Shown here: positions 21,623 to 37,964 of the stretch, piece by piece
Position numbering within the stretch: position 1 is the stretch's first letter
How the letters are laid out: each line of letters begins with the position of its first letter
IMG/VR virus record: IMGVR_UViG_3300049217_000071
Span: 62,001 to 126,000 of that record
Strand: one strand, 5' to 3'
DNA: 64,000 nucleotides
The notes under the pieces: generated by a model
What the model saw: only the letters and a program-made list of their open reading frames with translations
The model's database searches: none
What the model was told of the DNA's origin: nothing
Translations under genes and position numbers: made by a program

Positions 21623-22189
21623 ATGATATACGCCATCAGTTTCAAGCATAAGATTCCTGAGGGCGTCCTGTCTATGGATGTGACGTCCAGGTCAGGCACC
21701 TGGGGTAGGCACTTTAGCCCTTTCAATCTGGGGCCGGTCGATCTATATGACGGCTATGTGTCCCGCAACATCGAGAATGCCTTTCAGTATTCCAAGGTGT
21801 ATGCGGAATATTCTACCGTCTATGAACTGCCGGCTCCCCATTATTGGGAGTGGGCCAAAGCTGGTTGGGATAATCCTAAACCCAACAAGTATCCTATGGG
21901 TGCTTGGAACAAACACTTGTATCATTGGTGGGATAATAAGAAGCTGACCAACCTGGAAGCTCAAAACCAAATCTTCTTACCTCTCTACAAGAAGGCGGTG
22001 ATTGATACGCCAGCTTTCAAGAAACTGAAGGACAATTATCTGCATTCCGACAAGGATATTTATTTGATTGACTTCGAGGGGTATAATCATCGATTTTTGG
22101 AAAAGACCTGGGATCAGGTTATAAATGATCCCGACCGACCTGTGGGGCAAGCTTTTGCCCTGTGTATGTTGTTAGAAGGATACTTATGA
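21623..22189 (+). CDS. uncharacterised protein, paralog 1 (DUF6939-like, possibly NADAR-related)
   Basis: DVTSRS, FSPF, IENAFQYSKVY, YPMG, DFEGY. Confidence 0.7.
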   Translation: MIYAISFKHKIPEGVLSMDVTSRSGTWGRHFSPFNLGPVDLYDGYVSRNIENAFQYSKVYAEYSTVYELPAPHYWEWAKAGWDNPKPNKYPMGAWNKHLYHWWDNKKLTNLEAQNQIFLPLYKKAVIDTPAFKKLKDNYLHSDKDIYLIDFEGYNHRFLEKTWDQVINDPDRPVGQAFALCMLLEGYL

Positions 22190-22749
22190 TTCATGTCATT
22201 GGGCCTAATGATAAAGCTCCTGAAGGGGCTGCCATCATCAATACTACTTCCAGATCGAATACCTGGAGTCATTCACTGAGCCACTTTTTCTGTGGCCCCG
22301 TGGATTTATATGGTGGCTACAAATCTCTCAATGTGGAGAATGCTTGGCAGTTTTCCAAAGTGTATGAATACTACTTGGAAGCGGATGGTTCTGTAGGAGA
22401 ACGATACTTCAAGTGGGCCCAAGACGGATGGAACGATAAGTATGCTCATCGATATCCAATGGGTAAAGGAGTGGCCCCTCTGTTTTCCTATTGGGACGGA
22501 TATAGCCTGACATATGTAGAGGCTCGTAAAAAGATTTACATTCCTCTGTATTCTAAGGCGGTGCAAGAAACTTTCGCCTTTGAGAAATTGAAAAAGATGC
22601 ATCAGGAAGGCGCCGACCTTTACTTGTGGGATTTCGATGGTTATGATCATAAGATGTGCAATTTGTCTTATGAGCAGGTCATCAATAATCCTGACAGGAA
22701 GATGGGACACGCTTTTGTCATTGCAATGTTGTTAGAAGGCCACTTATGA
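22186..22749 (+). CDS. uncharacterised protein, paralog 2
   Basis: TTSRS, VENAWQFSKVY, YPMG, ARKKIYIPLY, DFDGY, GHAF. Confidence 0.75.
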   Translation: MIHVIGPNDKAPEGAAIINTTSRSNTWSHSLSHFFCGPVDLYGGYKSLNVENAWQFSKVYEYYLEADGSVGERYFKWAQDGWNDKYAHRYPMGKGVAPLFSYWDGYSLTYVEARKKIYIPLYSKAVQETFAFEKLKKMHQEGADLYLWDFDGYDHKMCNLSYEQVINNPDRKMGHAFVIAMLLEGHL

Positions 22750-31964: not shown

Positions 31965-32984
31965 ATGTCAAAGTTAGAGTATGTTTGGTTAGATGGCTGT
32001 AAACCTATGCAGAGTTTACGTAGTAAAACCAAAATCTTCAATAGGGTAAACTTACTAGACAGTTTTCGATTAGATCAATGCCCCATGTGGGGGTTTGACG
32101 GCAGCTCTACGGAACAGGCTACCGGAGACAAATCAGATTGTGTATTACAGCCAGTCTTTATGACCAGAGATCCTCAACGTAAAGGTGATTGTTATTTGGT
32201 AATGTGTGAGGTGCTCAATGCAGATGGCACACCTCATGCCTCTAATACCCGAGCCACCATTGAAGACGATAGTGAGGATTATTGGTTTGGTTTTGAGCAG
32301 GAGTATTTCCTATGGAATCCTGAGACCAATAAACCATTAGGTTTTCACGAAGTGCATACCACTCGTCCTCAAGGCCCTTATTATTGTTCAGTAGGTGCCA
32401 GCAATGCCTTTGGTCGAGAAATTGTGGAAGAGCACCTGGATGTATGTCTCGAAGCTGGCCTCAAGATCGAGGGCATCAATGCTGAGGTGGCCCCGGGCCA
32501 ATGGGAGTTTCAGGTTTTCGCCAAGGGAGCTAAGTTAGCAGGAGACCAATTATGGTTGGCCCGCTATCTATTGGAACGAATTGGCGAGAAACACGGAGTA
32601 GCTATCAATTGGCATTGTAAGCCCCTTGGTGATACAGACTGGAATGGCAGTGGAATGCATACCAACTTCTCTAATTCTCTATTGAGAACCTGTGGTAAAT
32701 CAGAAGTCTATGCCAAGGTATGTCAGGCTTTCAAGCCCGTGGTCAAAGAACATATGGATGTCTATGGCCCCCATAATGAAATGCGCTTGACAGGTAAACA
32801 CGAAACGGCTGCCATTGACCAGTTCTCCTACGGGATATCTGACCGAGGAGCCTCTATTCGTATCCCGATGGCTACCGTCAATAACGATTGGAAGGGCTGG
32901 TTAGAGGATAGGCGACCAAACAGTGCCGCTGACCCTTATCTGGTAGCTTCTAGAATTATCAAGACTCTCAAGACCGTTGGCTGA
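31965..32984 (+). CDS. glnII: glutamine synthetase type II
   Basis: EYVWLDG, LRSKT, FDGSST.QA, GFEQEY, QGPYYC, NAEV..GQWEFQ, WNGSGMH.NFS, RLTG.HET, RGASIRIP, EDRRP. Confidence 0.95.
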   Translation: MSKLEYVWLDGCKPMQSLRSKTKIFNRVNLLDSFRLDQCPMWGFDGSSTEQATGDKSDCVLQPVFMTRDPQRKGDCYLVMCEVLNADGTPHASNTRATIEDDSEDYWFGFEQEYFLWNPETNKPLGFHEVHTTRPQGPYYCSVGASNAFGREIVEEHLDVCLEAGLKIEGINAEVAPGQWEFQVFAKGAKLAGDQLWLARYLLERIGEKHGVAINWHCKPLGDTDWNGSGMHTNFSNSLLRTCGKSEVYAKVCQAFKPVVKEHMDVYGPHNEMRLTGKHETAAIDQFSYGISDRGASIRIPMATVNNDWKGWLEDRRPNSAADPYLVASRIIKTLKTVG

Positions 32985-33021
32985 GCAAAAGAGCCAGGCA
33001 AAGTAATAAATTGCCCTGCGC

Positions 33022-33049
33022 TTGACACGCCCCGTCTAAGCCTTACATT
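33022..33049 (+). promoter_or_regulatory. sigma70-type promoter of ligA
   Basis: TTGACA-16nt-TACATT. Confidence 0.7.
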
Positions 33050-33130
33050 GAGGGTGGCTGTTGGGAGAGGTGTATCCGCCCTCCGATTTTTAACTGGCCC
33101 GCACTTACCCAACCCTAAAAAGGTGAAAGA

Positions 33131-35002
33131 ATGTCATCAAATCGCATTACCGAGCTGGCTGATAAGATTACCCAGGCTCGATTGGACTATTACAATGGTC
33201 AGCCAACCGTTTCTGACAAGATTTTCGATGCTTGGGCCGATGAGCTTCGCACCCTGGACGCTAATCACATAGCTTTGACGGCTGTAGGTGCTCCTGTCGG
33301 CCCTTCCGAATGGAAGAAAGCTAAGCACCAGATCCCGATGGGATCTCTCAACAAAGTCAATCAACCTGCCGAAATGTTGGACTGGGCCAGTGATAAGAAC
33401 TGCAAGTCCTGGTTTATGACGGAAAAGCTGGACGGACTCTCTATAGAAGTGATCTATGAGGGTGGTAAGGTGGTACAAGCCATTACCCGAGGTGATGGTG
33501 AGACGGGCGAAGACATTACGGTCAACGTGATTCGTATGGGTGGAGTCAATCCCGATTTGAAAACTGACTTCAATGGTTCCCTTCGTGGTGAAATCATTAT
33601 GAAGAAGAGCATTCATCAGAAGTTCTTCGCTGATAAAGCCAATCCTCGCAATGCAGCTTCTGGTGTTTCCAAGCGTTTGGATGGTGTGGATGTGGATAAG
33701 CTCGACATTCTCTTCTACCAAGTTTTGGGTGATGTAGATTTCAAAACGGAAGAAGACCAGTTCAAGTGGTTGCAGAAGCATAAAGTCGGCACTCCCAACT
33801 ATTGGATCTGGAGTTCGGCTCTTGCCATCAATGTTATGTGGCGTGAATACCAAGACAAAGAGCGCGATAAGCTGGATTATGATATCGACGGACTGGTGGT
33901 TCGTATCAATGACATGGCCGATCAAATGGCTTGTGGTGATAAAGACCTCCGCCCCTTGGGTGCTATGGCCTTCAAGTTTGACAATGAGACCCGTGAGAGC
34001 ACTATCAAAGACATCATCTGGCAGGTGGGCAACAGTGGACGCCTAACTCCGGTGGCTGTGGTGGAGCCCGTTCTCCTGGTGGGAGCTATGGTTTCCCGAG
34101 CCAGCTTGTATAACATTGCCTACATTGAGGAATTGGGTTTGGATATCGGGGCCCGCGTCCTGGTGGCCCGAGCTAATGACGTGATTCCTCGCATTGAGGA
34201 GTTGGTCAAGGGTACCAAGACGGTAGCCAAGATGCCCAAGAAGTGTCCTGATTGTGGTGGAATAGTGGATATGCAGGGTGAGAACCTGATTTGCACCAAC
34301 ACGGAGAACTGCCGATCCCAGATCATTGGTCGCATCAAGAACTGGATCAAAGAACTCAACCTGTTGGAGTGGGGGGATTCTTTGGTGGAGAAGTTGGTGG
34401 ATGCTAAGAAGGTCAAGAACATTGCTGACCTCTATACTCTTCAAGTGGATGACATTTCCAAGTTGGATCGCTTGGGAGATAAGACGGCCAAGAAGTGTTT
34501 GGATATCTTGAACGCTAATAAGAATGTAGCTTTGGAAGTCTTTTTAGGCGCTTTATCCATTCCAACTATTGGGCAATCGACGATTAAATTAATAATGAAA
34601 GATGGTTGTGATACTTTAGAAAAGTTTGGTCAGTTAAGTAGCGTTCAATTTGAGCAGGTATCGGGAGTAGGTCCGGTCAAAGCGCGATTTTTAGCTGATG
34701 GACTCAAACATAATCAGCAACTAATCCTTGATTTGTTAAAAAATGGAGTGGAGATCAAAGAAATTGTTGATGGCAAATTGACTGGTAAAAGTTTTGCTAT
34801 TACTGGAACGCTCTCTATCAAGCGCGCTGAGGTTGAAAAATTGATTCAAGACAATGGCGGTGAAGTGAAAAGTAGCGTTGGAAAAGGATTGAACTACCTA
34901 ATTATTTCTGATCCACAATCTACCAGCAGTAAAGCACAAGCCGCCCGAAAGTTGGGTACCGTTCTTATTAACGAGGCACAATTTTTAGACTTGATTAGCT
35001 AA
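33131..35002 (+). CDS. ligA: NAD+-dependent DNA ligase
   Basis: EKLDG, TRGDG..GEDIT, NPRNAA, DGLVV, Zn finger, HhH, BRCT. Confidence 0.97.
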   Translation: MSSNRITELADKITQARLDYYNGQPTVSDKIFDAWADELRTLDANHIALTAVGAPVGPSEWKKAKHQIPMGSLNKVNQPAEMLDWASDKNCKSWFMTEKLDGLSIEVIYEGGKVVQAITRGDGETGEDITVNVIRMGGVNPDLKTDFNGSLRGEIIMKKSIHQKFFADKANPRNAASGVSKRLDGVDVDKLDILFYQVLGDVDFKTEEDQFKWLQKHKVGTPNYWIWSSALAINVMWREYQDKERDKLDYDIDGLVVRINDMADQMACGDKDLRPLGAMAFKFDNETRESTIKDIIWQVGNSGRLTPVAVVEPVLLVGAMVSRASLYNIAYIEELGLDIGARVLVARANDVIPRIEELVKGTKTVAKMPKKCPDCGGIVDMQGENLICTNTENCRSQIIGRIKNWIKELNLLEWGDSLVEKLVDAKKVKNIADLYTLQVDDISKLDRLGDKTAKKCLDILNANKNVALEVFLGALSIPTIGQSTIKLIMKDGCDTLEKFGQLSSVQFEQVSGVGPVKARFLADGLKHNQQLILDLLKNGVEIKEIVDGKLTGKSFAITGTLSIKRAEVEKLIQDNGGEVKSSVGKGLNYLIISDPQSTSSKAQAARKLGTVLINEAQFLDLIS

Positions 35003-35078
35003 AATCTATGCATATTATCACCTATCATTGGGATATTTATAGGATATATACGCCTATGAAGACTTAATGTGAGGAACG

Positions 35079-35669
35079 ATGAGGAAACGCAAAGTATATT
35101 TAGCTGATTCACCAGGACGCCCATCATCACGAGCAGTGTATTTCAATGGGGCTGTGTGGAAACCTGTCGATGACAAGACAAACTATTCGGTGGCTGATGT
35201 AGTTGAATGTTCGACTAATGGTAATCTTCTTTTGGTTGGTAATGAAACTTGGGAAGAAGTTTTTAGGAATAAAGGCGCTGTTAAGTGTAAAATACAAGAG
35301 TGTGAGAATGGGCCCCCTTTCATTAGGGGATTATGTAATACTCATTATCAACGAGCGCAGAGATGTGGTGATGAAAATTACATACCATATATGGCTCCCA
35401 AAGGAACTGGATTCACTCATAAATCAGGATATCGTATAGTTTCTGATGGCAATGGTGGTAAAATTAAAGAGCACCGTTTGGTAATGGAAAAGCATTTAGG
35501 TCGCAAACTTTTACCAGAAGAAAATGTTCACCACAAAAATGGAAACCGCTCTGATAATAGATTAGAAAATCTTGAATTGTGGAGTACAAAACAACCACAA
35601 GGTAAAAGAATAGAAGATTTAGTGGTGTATGCCAAGGAAATATTGAAGCTTTATGGAGATGAATTATGA
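35079..35669 (+). mobile_element. free-standing HNH endonuclease gene
   Basis: EHRLVME.HLGR.L...E.VHHKNG.R.DNR.ENLELW. Confidence 0.92.
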
Positions 35670-35830
35670 CTGTTTATAAAAAAGGTATATTAGATTGGTG
35701 TTCATCCGTGGAAGAAACTTTTCAGCCACGCGAGAATTTAACACGTGCAGAAGATGCTAAACAAATTCCAGAGCAATTTTTAGCAACAGCCATCCGATAT
35801 CTACGTGCTGTATGCAAGTAGCTTCCCGAT

Positions 35831-35866
35831 ATTTCTAAAGATGAGTTCTTGGAGTTGGTGAAATGA
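35831..35866 (+). pseudogene. probable orphaned C-terminus of ligA
   Basis: ISKDEFLELVK* vs INEAQFLDLIS*; stop overlaps the next ATG. Confidence 0.6.
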
Positions 35867-36264
35867 GTATCTTTGTAAGAATGGCTGACGCAATAATCAA
35901 TATCATTGGCCCGCCCGATGATATCAAGGCCGTCTATGTGCCTGCCAAGCGTGTAAGAGAAGATTTGGATGTCCCCAATATCTTTGTGGGCAAAATTATG
36001 GACGATGGAAACATCAAGTGTGAAGTTGTTGCCCATAATAACAAGAACAATATGCACGTCAAGATACTGGAGATCAAATGGGAACGTCTGGGAACCTATT
36101 TTGATGTAGGTAAAATCTATCCCGTGTTTATGCACTCTAACGGAATCTTGGGCGAAGGAATGCAGATTTGGGAGATTTCTTCCAAACGTATGAAGCGAGA
36201 TACTTCTCAGGTATTGTTGTGCTGGGAAAAAGATATTGGTTGGAGTTGGGACTTAGATTTTTGA
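35863..36264 (+). CDS. hypothetical protein
   Basis: 133-aa ORF. Confidence 0.65.
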   Translation: MSIFVRMADAIINIIGPPDDIKAVYVPAKRVREDLDVPNIFVGKIMDDGNIKCEVVAHNNKNNMHVKILEIKWERLGTYFDVGKIYPVFMHSNGILGEGMQIWEISSKRMKRDTSQVLLCWEKDIGWSWDLDF

Positions 36265-36273
36265 GGTGAGACG

Positions 36274-36495
36274 ATGAAGAAGGTCAAGATTGATAATGTG
36301 TGGCCACATGACATAATCAAAACAGAAAATGGTATCGGCCAAGTAGCCAGTGTTGAACAGGTATCGGATGGCGGGGCTCCCGCTAAGATTGAGTTTGCCT
36401 GGCATCAGGCCGGTTATCCATACACGGCTTATTTTTACTGGTCAACAGAAGTTGTTGTTCTTTCAGATGAAGATCTGCTACATCTTCGGAATTGA
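36274..36495 (+). CDS. hypothetical protein
   Basis: GAGGTG RBS. Confidence 0.6.
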   Translation: MKKVKIDNVWPHDIIKTENGIGQVASVEQVSDGGAPAKIEFAWHQAGYPYTAYFYWSTEVVVLSDEDLLHLRN

Positions 36496-36510
36496 GATAT
36501 AGGAGGTTCT

Positions 36511-37013: not shown

Positions 37014-37297
37014 TTGCTCTCCTTGCCATTTTCGGTTTAGCCTTTGCTATCAAAGAGACCTCCGGTCCTTTTGATGTCTTGGATAAGCTGCGTGGTTTAC
37101 TGATGCGAAACAAATACGTGGGAGTTTTCTTCTACGGTTTGCTTTCCTGCTATTTCTGCGTGGGTTTCCACTGCGGGTGGATCGTTTATCTATTGAGCGA
37201 GGAAAATTACACGTGGCAATTTTTTATGCTTTATGGTTTGGCTGGCGGAACGGTTTGTTTAATCATTGATGCCTTGCTCTCGAAGCTCCATCAATAA
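37001..37297 (+). CDS. membrane protein (DUF1360-like)
   Basis: GPF....LR, LLSCYFCVGFH, TM helices. Confidence 0.7.
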   Translation: MHLLIALLAIFGLAFAIKETSGPFDVLDKLRGLLMRNKYVGVFFYGLLSCYFCVGFHCGWIVYLLSEENYTWQFFMLYGLAGGTVCLIIDALLSKLHQ

Positions 37298-37964
37298 CAT
37301 TTTGTTTGGCTGATAACGGTCGCAAATTATCTAATGCCCAACATTTTTGGAAGTTAGCATCATTCATAGAAGAATAAAGCAGAGTTGATTGAGGGACAAT
37401 ATGATCAATCTGCCAAGTCCAAGTGGATGAATCATTATCATCCCAAATTTTATGATTGTACGAGCCATGATTTTGCCAGGTCATCCACGGCTCAAAATGC
37501 TTTTCGAGATGCGATTTTAATTCTTGGAAAGAATACGGAAGATATTTAGTTATCGATCCGTTTTTGGATATGGCTTTCTGAACGCTTCTACTAATAATTT
37601 TTCTCAATCGAAAAGCGATATCGTTTTGTCTTCTCTTTCTATCTTGCTCTCTTCGTATTGCCTTATGTTCTGCACGATAATTTCTGTTGTACTCTGAGAT
37701 TTTATCTTTATTCTTTTTCTTGTATGCAGATTTTCTCTTCTTCACCACTTCTGCGTGGTTCAGTCGATATCTTTTTTCGTTTTCTCTACACCGTTCTTTG
37801 TTGTTTTGGTGCCACTCAGTAGTTTTGTTATTTTGACATTCTATACAATAGGGGGCCCAATAAATAGAGATGACACCCGATTTTTTTATGTATTTTCTTT
37901 GCTTAAAGTTGTCTACTGTTAGTTCCAAACTACGATTACAGCTAATACAAATCTTGTGTTTCAT
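37263..37964 (-). mobile_element. free-standing HNH-type endonuclease gene
   Basis: CISC, YCIEC, HLEKHF..WMTW.N.G, WQIDHIVP, CWAL.NLRPL....N. Confidence 0.88.

What the first reader, a model, noticed from the sequence alone, without database searches (positions are those of the whole stretch)
34520..35866. DNA ligase tail apparently swapped; old end stranded after the HNH
ligA ends INEAQFLDLIS*. After the HNH and a 51-aa ORF (35666-35821) comes ISKDEFLELVK*, same register to the stop and ATGA-coupled to the next gene. By eye, ligA codons shift to A/T-ending from about 34520, suggesting a long incoming tract. The match is short (4 of 11 identical), so this is weaker than the other cases.
Basis: partly seen in the sequence, partly recalled or inferred. 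Interest (0 to 1): 0.62.

Follow-up and report, generated by a model that had tools for sequence, protein, structure and literature searches.

The report
Homing-nuclease-linked swap of ligase gene end
In this uncultured huge phage, the last quarter of the DNA ligase gene was replaced by a foreign version that travels with a selfish HNH nuclease gene, and a 36-base relic of an older ligase end survives downstream; this is an ordinary kind of event, but unusually well documented here.

Summary
The ligA gene (33131-35002) changes character near base 34514-34565. GC3 drops from 0.58 to 0.33. Identity to its nearest relative falls from 84% to 59% in DNA, and from 90% to 69% in protein. Trees of the 5' and 3' parts disagree significantly.

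The new 3' part, which I call the "LINE" allele, is found in many unrelated ligase backgrounds. It is the only allele followed by orthologues of the HNH gene at 35079-35669 (4 of 6 LINE loci against 0 of 70 others).

The 12-mer DISKDEFLELVK is the best match in the whole 268-kb genome to the usual ligase end. It matches a relative's real ligA end at 32 of 36 bases. It keeps the same overlap with the next gene that HNH-less relatives show between ligA and that gene.

The relic was probably not stranded by this HNH's arrival. The same junction of small ORF and relic occurs in relatives with an unrelated HNH, and in one with no HNH. The 51-aa ORF is a real conserved gene.

Best reading: free-standing homing endonucleases drive repeated replacement of the ligase end, layered on an older insertion. 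This is a new member of a known kind.

The parts
33131..35002 (+). NAD-dependent DNA ligase gene (ligA, 623 aa). It is intact but mosaic.
   Evidence: Pfam finds the adenylation, OB, HhH and BRCT domains. There are 119 homologues at 69-85% identity.
33131..34513 (+). Resident 5' part of ligA (codons 1-461).
   Evidence: GC3 is 0.58. It is 90% identical in protein to P0002 and 84% in DNA to L086. It is sister to P0002 with SH-aLRT support 100.
34514..35002 (+). Incoming 3' part of ligA (end of the HhH region plus the BRCT domain), the 'LINE' allele. The left boundary lies between 34514 and 34565.
   Evidence: GC3 is 0.33. The identity change point against L086 is at 34546. A lake-water contig stops matching at 34565. 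This part sits in a LINE clade with support 99, next to P0006 and P0026. The residues diagnostic of LINE lie only at positions 487-622.
35003..35078 (+). A 76-base spacer that belongs to the HNH module.
   Evidence: Blocks of it are conserved in all four module copies for which DNA is held. A weak sigma-70-like site lies at 34991-35018. It is a lead only.
35079..35669 (+). Free-standing HNH endonuclease gene (196 aa, HNH_3). Its TGA overlaps the ATG of the next ORF.
   Evidence: Pfam E = 4.8e-12. dN/dS is 0.10-0.12 against the L001 and L084 orthologues. No Rfam intron was found in 33000-36500. Permafrost runs hold copies of 34852-35656 with 0-1 mismatches.
35666..35821 (+). A 51-aa conserved small gene (the orf52/66 family), ending in TAG.
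   Evidence: Homologues are found in L009 (52 aa, directly after ligA), L001, L088, L090 and others. dN/dS is 0.08-0.13.
35822..35830 (+). A 9-base linker (coding LPD) between the small gene and the relic. It is not ligase-like.
   Evidence: It is shared with L001 and with most members of the orf66 family, where it reads ELPD.
35831..35866 (+). Relic of a ligase gene end: 11 codons (ISKDEFLELVK) plus the stop. It carries a GGAG and the ATGA overlap for g133.
   Evidence: It ranks 1 of 313,577 12-mers. It matches the L009 ligA end at 32 of 36 bases. It is colinear with the L086 ligA end and the g133 start remnant.
35863..36264 (+). g133, the 133-aa gene coupled to the relic. In HNH-less relatives its homologue is coupled directly to ligA.
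   Evidence: Its homologue follows ligA directly in L004, L005, L023, L085 and L090. L086 keeps only its first and last few codons. GC3 is 0.49, the genome norm.

Best explanation
The locus records two layers of endonuclease-driven gene-end replacement.

Layer 1 is older and partly inferred. In an ancestor where ligA overlapped g133, a block was inserted 36 bases before the ligA stop. The block held a substitute ligase 3' end, probably a homing endonuclease gene, and the small gene orf52. The gene stayed whole because the block brought its own end. The last 11 codons of the old gene were left behind orf52, still carrying the ribosome-binding site and the start overlap of g133.

Layer 2 is recent, and its sequence pattern is shown. 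The present module is the 'LINE' ligase 3' allele, a 76-base spacer and an HNH_3 endonuclease gene. It entered this genome by recombination, with the left crossover at 34514-34565 inside ligA and the right end at about the HNH/orf51 border or within orf51.

The likely mechanism is intronless homing, and this step is inferred. The HNH cuts ligA alleles that lack it. The break is repaired from an HNH-bearing co-infecting genome, and the flanking ligase sequence is co-converted. The LINE allele is probably the cut-resistant version of the target. A second, unrelated HNH (PF01844) does the same in relatives, with its own 'LIDE' ligase allele.
For: Mosaic ligA:
- GC3 falls from 0.58 to 0.33 at base 34514. 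L086 shows no such break.
- P0002 is 90% identical over residues 1-460 and 69% over 461-623. P0086 is 64% and 85% over the same parts.
- In the 5' tree the window is sister to P0002, and the LINE label needs at least 10 changes. In the 3' tree LINE forms one clade with support 99.
- AU tests reject a LINE clade in the 5' part (p = 7.5e-5) and a window+P0002 clade in the 3' part (p = 0.004).

Link between the HNH and the LINE allele:
- The HNH orthologue follows 4 of 6 LINE loci with DNA and 0 of 70 others (Fisher p = 1.2e-5).
- It is also present after ligA on the P0026 contig.

Ongoing mobility:
- L082 and L085 differ at 10 bases in the first 4992, then diverge from ligA codon 331 onward.
- Permafrost runs hold 34852-35656 with 0-1 mismatches, but the ligA 5' part only at 85-90%.
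- A lake-water contig is 92% identical up to 34565, then has 805 unlike bases in place of 1414, and resumes inside g133.
- HNH dN/dS is 0.10-0.12.

The relic:
- It ranks first in the genome and matches a real ligA end at 32 of 36 bases.
- It is colinear with the real ligA end and g133 start of L086.
- ligA is coupled directly to g133 in L004 and L005.

Older date of the relic:
- The same junction is found in L001, L088 (with the other HNH) and L090 (no HNH).

Independent proof that ligase ends get stranded in this phage group:
- L084 carries a 43-aa LIDE ligase fragment before the PF01844 HNH.
- It also carries GTILLSEEDFLNLMK* right after that HNH and just before the metallophosphatase gene.
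Against: - No cleavage or homing was observed. The target site is unknown.
- Two LINE loci (L083, L012) and the P0086 contig lack the HNH.
- The loci compared are neither phylogenetically independent nor randomly sampled. Several LINE loci were fetched because they were LINE.
- The permafrost pieces are short contigs of 150-560 bases, so their genomic background is not linked to them.
- L090, with the order ligA, g133, orf66, needs an extra rearrangement under this model.
- The relic is only 36 bases long. Whether it is this lineage's own DNA or came with a donor cannot be settled. It matches L086 at 29 of 36 bases and the L001 relic at 26 of 36.
Confidence: 0.72

Rival explanations
1. Single event. 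The module consisting of the LINE ligase end, the HNH and orf51 entered this genome's own ligA 36 bases before its stop, and stranded this genome's own old end. The junction looks the same in other genomes because repair copies it from the donor template each time.
For: - GC3 is low from 34514 to 35821 (ligA 3' part 0.33, HNH 0.26, orf51 0.25) and returns to the genome norm at the relic and g133 (0.47, 0.49).
- The relic carries the minority ...FLELVK variant, as do the window's nearest 5' relatives P0002, P0004 and L086.
- L086 shows that this lineage once had its ligA end joined to the g133 start.
- The nearest relative by ligA 5' identity (the lake-water contig) has no HNH between ligA and g133.
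Against: - orf52/66 has low GC3 (0.21-0.26) in every genome, whatever the background, so the GC3 boundary at 35821 is not informative.
- The near-identity with the permafrost copy ends at about 35656. The orf51 region is then 93% identical and soon becomes unlike, which suggests that orf51 is a flank and not cargo.
- The same junction occurs with an unrelated HNH in L088 and with no HNH in L090.
Confidence: 0.17
2. The tail is not a relic. It is the native C-terminus of the orf66 protein family, which shares a short functional peptide with the ligase, for example a motif that binds a common partner. The window copy is simply cut short by a TAG.
For: - Six of the nine family members aligned are read through the linker ELP[DEN] into a ligase-like tail.
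- L090 carries such a tail away from the ligase end and with no HNH nearby.
- The genome holds two tRNA genes with a CUA anticodon, and TAG is a rare stop (7 of 239 long ORFs), so read-through here is conceivable.
Against: - The tails vary in length, in stop position and in sequence: ISEEEFLDLVK, MSEEQFLEMVKKNE, LSAEEFLEQKKP, SVEEKSLDKI, or none. The first 50 residues are strongly conserved by comparison.
- L009 ends at CKEE* with no tail.
- The DNA is colinear with real ligA ends beyond the stop codon and into the start of g133.
- P0247's tail is identical in 11 of 11 residues, and in its end position, to ligase tails such as that of P0070.
- L084 shows ligase ends stranded with no orf52 involved.
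Confidence: 0.08
3. There was no recombination. The GC3 shift reflects domain-specific codon use in the BRCT region, and the tail similarity is due to chance.
For: Most relatives show a slightly lower GC3 in the last 163 codons, by 0.05-0.12. The two tails within the window share only 4 of 11 residues.
Against: - The drop is 0.25 here and 0.37 in L001, against 0.01 in the nearest relative L086.
- The AU tests reject congruent trees for the two parts.
- The tail ranks 1 of 313,577 12-mers.
Confidence: 0.01

Closest known systems
Mobile endonuclease ORFs (mORFs) of fungal mitochondria that make 'gene hybrids': Allomyces macrogynus atp6, and Glomus sp. atp6, atp9, cox2 and nad3 (PMC3630166, read)
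   Same: A foreign C-terminal coding segment arrives together with an endonuclease ORF and completes the host gene. The native C-terminal piece is left downstream as a duplicate. That native piece resembles close relatives' gene ends more than the inserted one does.
   Different: - The host here is a huge phage, the gene is a DNA ligase and the nuclease is an HNH (LAGLIDADG or GIY-YIG in the fungi).
- The endonuclease is a separate ORF behind a 76-base spacer, not fused in frame.
- The relic is only 11 codons long, and a small conserved gene separates it from the nuclease.
- The relic appears older than the present nuclease.
Free-standing homing endonucleases of T-even phages (SegF, SegG, SegE, MobE), known as 'intronless homing' with marker exclusion and co-conversion (PMC2988022, read)
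   Same: An endonuclease gene lies between genes and is present in some relatives but not others. Flanking sequence of an essential replication or repair gene is co-converted, giving mosaic alleles with tract ends that vary between genomes.
   Different: Nothing here was tested by crosses or cleavage. The T4 cases, as far as I know (my own knowledge), are not described with a stranded duplicate of the neighbouring gene's end. Here two unrelated HNH families each carry a private allele of the same gene end.
Nuclease genes at the boundaries of genetic exchange between phages (ICP1 and others; PMC10448857, read)
   Same: An HNH-3 homing endonuclease gene lies next to an essential gene, at a sharp break in sequence similarity between related phages.
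   Different: A text search of that paper for remnant, duplicate and ligase found no stranded gene ends and no ligase case.
Integrating elements that carry a replacement 3' end of their tRNA or tmRNA target gene (my own knowledge, not tested here)
   Same: The mobile DNA brings a substitute for the part of the gene that it displaces, so the gene stays functional while the old end is pushed downstream.
   Different: Those elements use site-specific integrases and attachment sites. Here no integrase is present, and the pattern fits break repair by homologous recombination.

Membership tests
Free-standing homing endonuclease gene (intronless homing) | Encodes a nuclease of a homing-endonuclease family | tested here: met
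   HNH_3 (PF13392), E = 4.8e-12, residues 132-171. The reading frame is intact and dN/dS is 0.10-0.12.
Free-standing homing endonuclease gene (intronless homing) | Lies outside any intron or intein | tested here: met
   It is a separate ORF after the ligA stop. ligA is one open frame. There is no Rfam match up to E = 1 in 33000-36500.
Free-standing homing endonuclease gene (intronless homing) | Present or absent at the same locus among close relatives | tested here: met
   - Absent in L086, the P0002 contig, the lake-water contig and 70 other loci.
- Present in L001, L082, L084 and the P0026 contig.
Free-standing homing endonuclease gene (intronless homing) | Co-converted flanking sequence with mosaic boundaries | tested here: met
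   The window's boundary is at 34514-34565. In the L082/L085 pair the boundary is at ligA codon 331. P0017 is LINE up to residue 575 and of the usual type after that.
Free-standing homing endonuclease gene (intronless homing) | Site-specific cleavage of the allele that lacks the gene, and its preferential inheritance in mixed infection | not testable with these tools
   This needs enzyme assays or crosses. The phage is known only from metagenomes.
mORF-type gene hybrid (foreign C-terminus, endonuclease, native C*-terminus) | An inserted foreign 3' segment completes the host gene in frame | tested here: met
   ligA is intact with a full BRCT match over residues 548-622. Its 3' part belongs to a different clade from its 5' part.
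mORF-type gene hybrid (foreign C-terminus, endonuclease, native C*-terminus) | A native C*-terminal duplicate lies downstream of the endonuclease and is closer to relatives' gene ends than the inserted end is | tested here: met
   The relic scores 25.2 bits against 15.5 for the present tail. It matches the L009 ligA end at 32 of 36 bases. It is only 11 codons long.
mORF-type gene hybrid (foreign C-terminus, endonuclease, native C*-terminus) | The duplicate was created by the insertion of the endonuclease now present | tested here: inconclusive
   The same junction is found with another HNH (L088) and with none (L090). This points to an older event, but templated repair could copy the junction each time.
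NAD-dependent DNA ligase (LigA) | Adenylation, OB-fold, helix-hairpin-helix and BRCT domains in that order | tested here: met
   PF01653, PF03120, PF14520/PF12826 and PF00533 match in that order. The zinc-finger model was not reported, although four cysteines lie at residues 372-394 and are invariant across 28 relatives.

The most novel reading that the evidence does not exclude
The stranded ligase end may have been put to use rather than being dead DNA. It may serve as the landing strip and right-hand homology arm for successive homing endonucleases. It may also supply the ribosome-binding site and start overlap that keep g133 expressed. In most relatives it is translated as a ligase-mimicking C-terminal peptide on the small orf52 protein. 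In this genome that extension would depend on read-through of a TAG by one of the phage's two CUA-anticodon tRNAs, which would make it a switchable ligase-tail mimic.
Probability: 0.1. Interest if true: 0.7.

Novelty: new member of a known kind. Interest (0 to 1): 0.47.

Why it matters
This locus shows, in an uncultured group of huge phages with genomes up to about 500 kb, that selfish nuclease genes repeatedly rewrite the end of an essential replication enzyme. They also spread a private version of its BRCT domain across otherwise unrelated genomes. The same 800 bases are nearly identical in moss and permafrost samples.

There are practical consequences too. A single-gene ligase tree of these phages would be misleading. 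Short ORFs and odd 'tails' next to nuclease genes can be fossils of earlier insertions. One relative, L084, preserves three stacked ligase ends, so such fossils can be used to order past invasion events.

Tried and rejected
- A DNA search of 50,697 phage records found nothing. The best cultured-phage ligase is only 32.5% identical, so no annotated relative could be used.
- Single-protein scans of viral contigs with the ligase and with g133 found nothing.
- DNA of the contigs holding P0002, P0086 and P0026 could not be fetched; only gene tables came back. L086, from the same 90% cluster as P0002, was used instead.
- I tested genome-wide TAG recoding as an explanation for the in-frame TAG. Standard-code ORFs already cover 92.6% of the genome. 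Reading TAG as sense gains no more than reading TGA as sense does (0.96 against 0.97), and a count of long frames with internal stops was uninformative. I therefore named no other genetic code.
- A search for the NCLDV capsid family rang nowhere, including the controls, so it says nothing.
- No terminator-like site was found in 34800-36400. The promoter-like sites are barely above the shuffled expectation (8 against 4.4).
- The third AU test, which held the window together with P0006 and P0026 in the 5' tree, did not finish.
- A genome-wide scan for duplicated gene ends mostly returned tandem paralogues. One example is 21623-22189 with 22186-22749, which is not a stranded end.
- GC3 could not serve as a marker for the right boundary, because orf52/66 has low GC3 in every genome.
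Full report
**Setting.** The window is bases 62001-126000 of a single 268,344-base virus record. The record has 44.7% G+C. It is linear and about 62% complete by CheckV, and it most likely comes from a moss metagenome. No cultured phage is close: a DNA search found nothing, and the best ligase match is 32.5% identical. Metagenomes hold many relatives on contigs of up to about 510 kb. In these, the genes upstream of the ligase are syntenic: PTH2, Thg1, a phenylalanyl-tRNA synthetase subunit, an HD protein and a 194-aa gene.

**The observation.**
- ligA runs 33131-35002 and ends INEAQFLDLIS*.
- After a 76-base spacer comes an HNH_3 gene (35079-35669; Pfam E = 4.8e-12). Its TGA overlaps the ATG of a 51-aa ORF (35666-35821, ending in TAG).
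- In the same frame follow LPD and ISKDEFLELVK*, ending at 35866. That TGA overlaps the ATG at 35863 of a 133-aa gene, which I call g133.

**Is ligA mosaic?** Yes, by five lines of evidence.
1. GC3 changes from 0.58 to 0.33 at codon 461 (base 34514). The nearest relative with DNA, L086, has 0.57 and 0.56. L001, another carrier of the same HNH, has 0.61 and 0.24.
2. DNA identity to L086 falls from 84% to 59%, with a change point at 34546.
3. In protein, P0002 is 90% identical over residues 1-460 and 69% over 461-623. P0086 is 64% and 85% over the same parts.
4. The trees of the two parts disagree.
   - In the 5' tree the window is sister to P0002 (support 100), and proteins with the new kind of tail are scattered, needing at least 10 changes.
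   - In the 3' tree those proteins form one clade (support 99), with the window next to P0006 and P0026.
   - AU tests reject the congruent alternatives (p = 7.5e-5 and p = 0.004).
5. A 2471-base contig from a lake-water run is 92% identical to the window from 33851 to 34565. It then has 805 unlike bases where the window has 1414, and it resumes inside g133 at 35980.

The residues that define the new allele lie only at positions 487-622, which is the end of the HhH region plus the BRCT domain. I call this allele LINE, after its ...LINE.QFLDLI. ending.

**The allele travels with the HNH.**
- Among loci with DNA, orthologues of this HNH (at least 60% identical) follow 4 of 6 LINE-type ligases: the window, L001, L082 and L084. 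They follow none of 70 other ligases that have at least 300 bases downstream (Fisher p = 1.2e-5).
- The gene table of the P0026 contig shows the HNH after ligA as well.
- Exceptions exist. L083, L012 and the P0086 contig have the allele without the HNH. P0017 is LINE only up to residue 575.
- The sampling is neither independent nor random, so the p-value is indicative only.
- The HNH is under purifying selection (dN/dS 0.10-0.12). It lies in no intron known to Rfam.
- The 76-base spacer is conserved in all four copies with DNA.

**The exchange is ongoing.**
- L082 (LINE plus HNH) and L085 (a third tail class...LIDEDSLLNLTI) differ at only 10 of their first 4992 bases. They then diverge from ligA codon 331 to the end.
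- Two permafrost runs from another study hold contigs with 0-1 mismatches to 34852-35656, which covers the ligase end, the spacer and the HNH. In the same runs, pieces matching the ligA 5' part are only 85-90% identical, and nothing matches g133.
- Those permafrost contigs are short, so their genomic background is inferred and not shown.

**Is the downstream 11-mer a ligase end?** Yes.
- Most of the 119 relatives end in LISE[ED][ED]FL[DE]LVK.
- A matrix built from 107 such ends ranks DISKDEFLELVK first among 313,577 12-mers in the six frames of the whole genome. It scores 25.2 bits, against 17.3 for the runner-up and 15.5 for the ligase's present tail.
- The DNA from 35831 to 35866 matches the real ligA end of L009 at 32 of 36 bases, with a score far above shuffles.
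- The match runs on past the stop. The window reads AAATGAGTATCTTT and L086's real ligA end reads AAATAAGTATTTGG. In L086, a remnant of the last six codons of g133 follows. So L086's ancestor had ligA overlapping g133.
- In L004, L005, L023, L085 and L090, a g133 homologue follows ligA directly.
- The relic also contains a GGAG eight bases before the g133 start (read from the sequence). This could explain why it has been kept; that is an inference.

**Was it stranded by this HNH?** Probably not.
- The 51-aa ORF is a real gene, with dN/dS of 0.08-0.13. In the HNH-less locus L009 it follows ligA with an ATGA overlap and ends at ...CKEE*, with no tail.
- In six of the nine aligned family members, the ORF is read through a linker ELP[DEN] into a ligase-like tail. 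A seventh carries the linker but stops two residues later.
- L001 has the same HNH, and the tail reads DISLDEFLDKVK.
- L088 has an unrelated HNH (PF01844) behind a LIDE-type ligase. Its tail PISEEEFLDLVK again overlaps a g133 homologue.
- L090 has no HNH, and the ORF follows g133. Its tail has decayed to LSAEEFLEQKKP.
- The tails differ in length and in stop position, while the first 50 residues are well conserved. That fits an appended relic better than a selected motif.
- The junction therefore predates the present module. The permafrost near-identity ends at about 35656, and the next 91 bases have 6 mismatches before the contig becomes unlike. This suggests that orf51 now acts as the right-hand flank for the HNH.
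- I cannot exclude that the module and orf51 arrived together, with the 36 bases being this lineage's own. The relic has the minority ELVK ending, like its nearest relatives, and it matches L086 at 29 of 36 bases against 26 of 36 for the L001 relic. The difference is too small to decide.

**Independent precedent in the same phage group.** L084 carries three ligase ends in a row:
- the working LINE end, followed by the HNH_3 gene and two cargo ORFs;
- a 43-aa fragment reading ...LVIADVNSTSSKAVAARKLGIKLIDEENLLHLVI*, followed by the PF01844 HNH;
- GTILLSEEDFLNLMK* immediately after that HNH's stop and eight bases before the metallophosphatase gene. That gene follows ligA directly in L008, L011, L012, L022 and L083.

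L085 keeps only the first 31 codons of the PF01844 HNH between a LIDE ligase and g133. So two unrelated HNH families each go with a private ligase-end allele, and both leave ligase ends behind.

**Mechanism.**
- Shown: the mosaic structure, the linkage of allele and HNH, the presence and absence of the HNH among relatives, the near-identical copies in unrelated samples, and the relics.
- Inferred from established knowledge of free-standing homing endonucleases (PMC2988022): the HNH cuts ligA alleles that lack it. The break is resected and repaired from an HNH-bearing genome during co-infection, and ligase sequence is co-converted back to the first stretch with enough homology. The conserved LEVFLGALSIP.IGQSTIK region at codons 468-486 is a likely crossover site. 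The LINE allele is probably the uncuttable form of the target.
- Inferred for the original stranding: a break repaired from a donor whose right flank had no homologue in the recipient, so that the join was illegitimate and fell 36 bases before the stop.

**Comparison with known systems.**
- The architecture matches the 'gene hybrids' made by mobile endonuclease ORFs in fungal mitochondria: foreign C-terminus, endonuclease, native C*-terminus (PMC3630166).
- The dynamics match intronless homing and marker exclusion in T-even phages, and the finding that nuclease genes sit at boundaries of exchange between phages (PMC10448857). A term search of that last paper found no stranded ends and no ligase case.
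- I file this as a new member of a known kind.

**Limits.**
- There is no biochemistry.
- Several key relatives are known only from gene tables.
- The relic is short.
- L090 needs an extra rearrangement under the model.

Noticed in passing
G000:C1:161750-161822 and 163289-163362 (outside the window); window 35819-35821: The genome encodes 53 tRNAs and a tmRNA, including two tRNAs with a CUA anticodon. TAG ends only 7 of 239 long ORFs. The TAG that ends orf51 aligns with GAA in L001. Read-through to a 66-aa product is therefore conceivable, but coverage tests show no genome-wide recoding.
   Followed up: partly
L087 (G000:C1:135000-138000): 573-1505, 1549-2358, 2355-2393: This is a second stranded gene end in the same genome. 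A polynucleotide kinase/phosphatase gene ends GLTCFQVAPGDF*. It is followed by a 269-aa ORF with helix-turn-helix hits, and then by GLTCFQVAEGDF*. The working end uses G/C-ending codons and the stranded copy uses A/T-ending ones.
   Followed up: partly
window 31965-32984: A 339-aa glutamine synthetase gene lies between the 194-aa gene and ligA. It is absent at this position in L086, L001 and the P0002 contig, so it is an insertion relative to them.
   Followed up: partly
L084 5943-8947: One locus holds three stacked ligase ends and two different HNH genes. Between them lie two ORFs of 282 and 189 aa with no Pfam hit. By eye, the first has a GNPPFG motif like those of DNA methyltransferases.
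   Followed up: partly
L082 and L085, 1-5893: These are near-isogenic contigs from two related samples. They differ at 10 bases in the first 4992, then carry different ligase 3' parts from codon 331 on: LINE plus HNH in one, LIDE in the other.
   Followed up: yes
L086 6870-6904: g133 has been deleted, leaving its first bases (GTAT) and its last six codons between ligA and the 72-aa gene.
   Followed up: yes
L085 5910-6002: A 31-codon remnant of the PF01844-type HNH, 90% identical to the start of the L084 copy, lies between a LIDE-type ligA and the g133 homologue. It looks like a decayed endonuclease gene.
   Followed up: partly
window 37263-37964 (minus strand): A 233-aa cysteine- and lysine-rich ORF has, by eye, an H-N-H-like C-terminal motif (...IDHIVPQS...NLRPL...) but no Pfam hit at E <= 0.001. 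It may be another homing-type nuclease close to this locus.
   Followed up: no
window 34985-35095: The spacer between ligA and the HNH has conserved blocks in four genomes, and a weak promoter-like site lies at 34991-35018. It may be the nuclease's own expression signal.
   Followed up: partly
window 21623-22189 and 22186-22749: These are tandem paralogues of 188 and 187 aa joined by an ATGA overlap. My scan for duplicated gene ends picked them up, but they are whole-gene duplicates and not a stranded end.
   Followed up: partly
P0017 (ligase on a 478,717-base ENA contig): This is a reverse mosaic. The LINE-diagnostic residues run from 487 to 575, and the usual type follows from 588 to the end (...LISEDDFLNLVK). 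It may record a partial conversion or a loss of the HNH.
   Followed up: no
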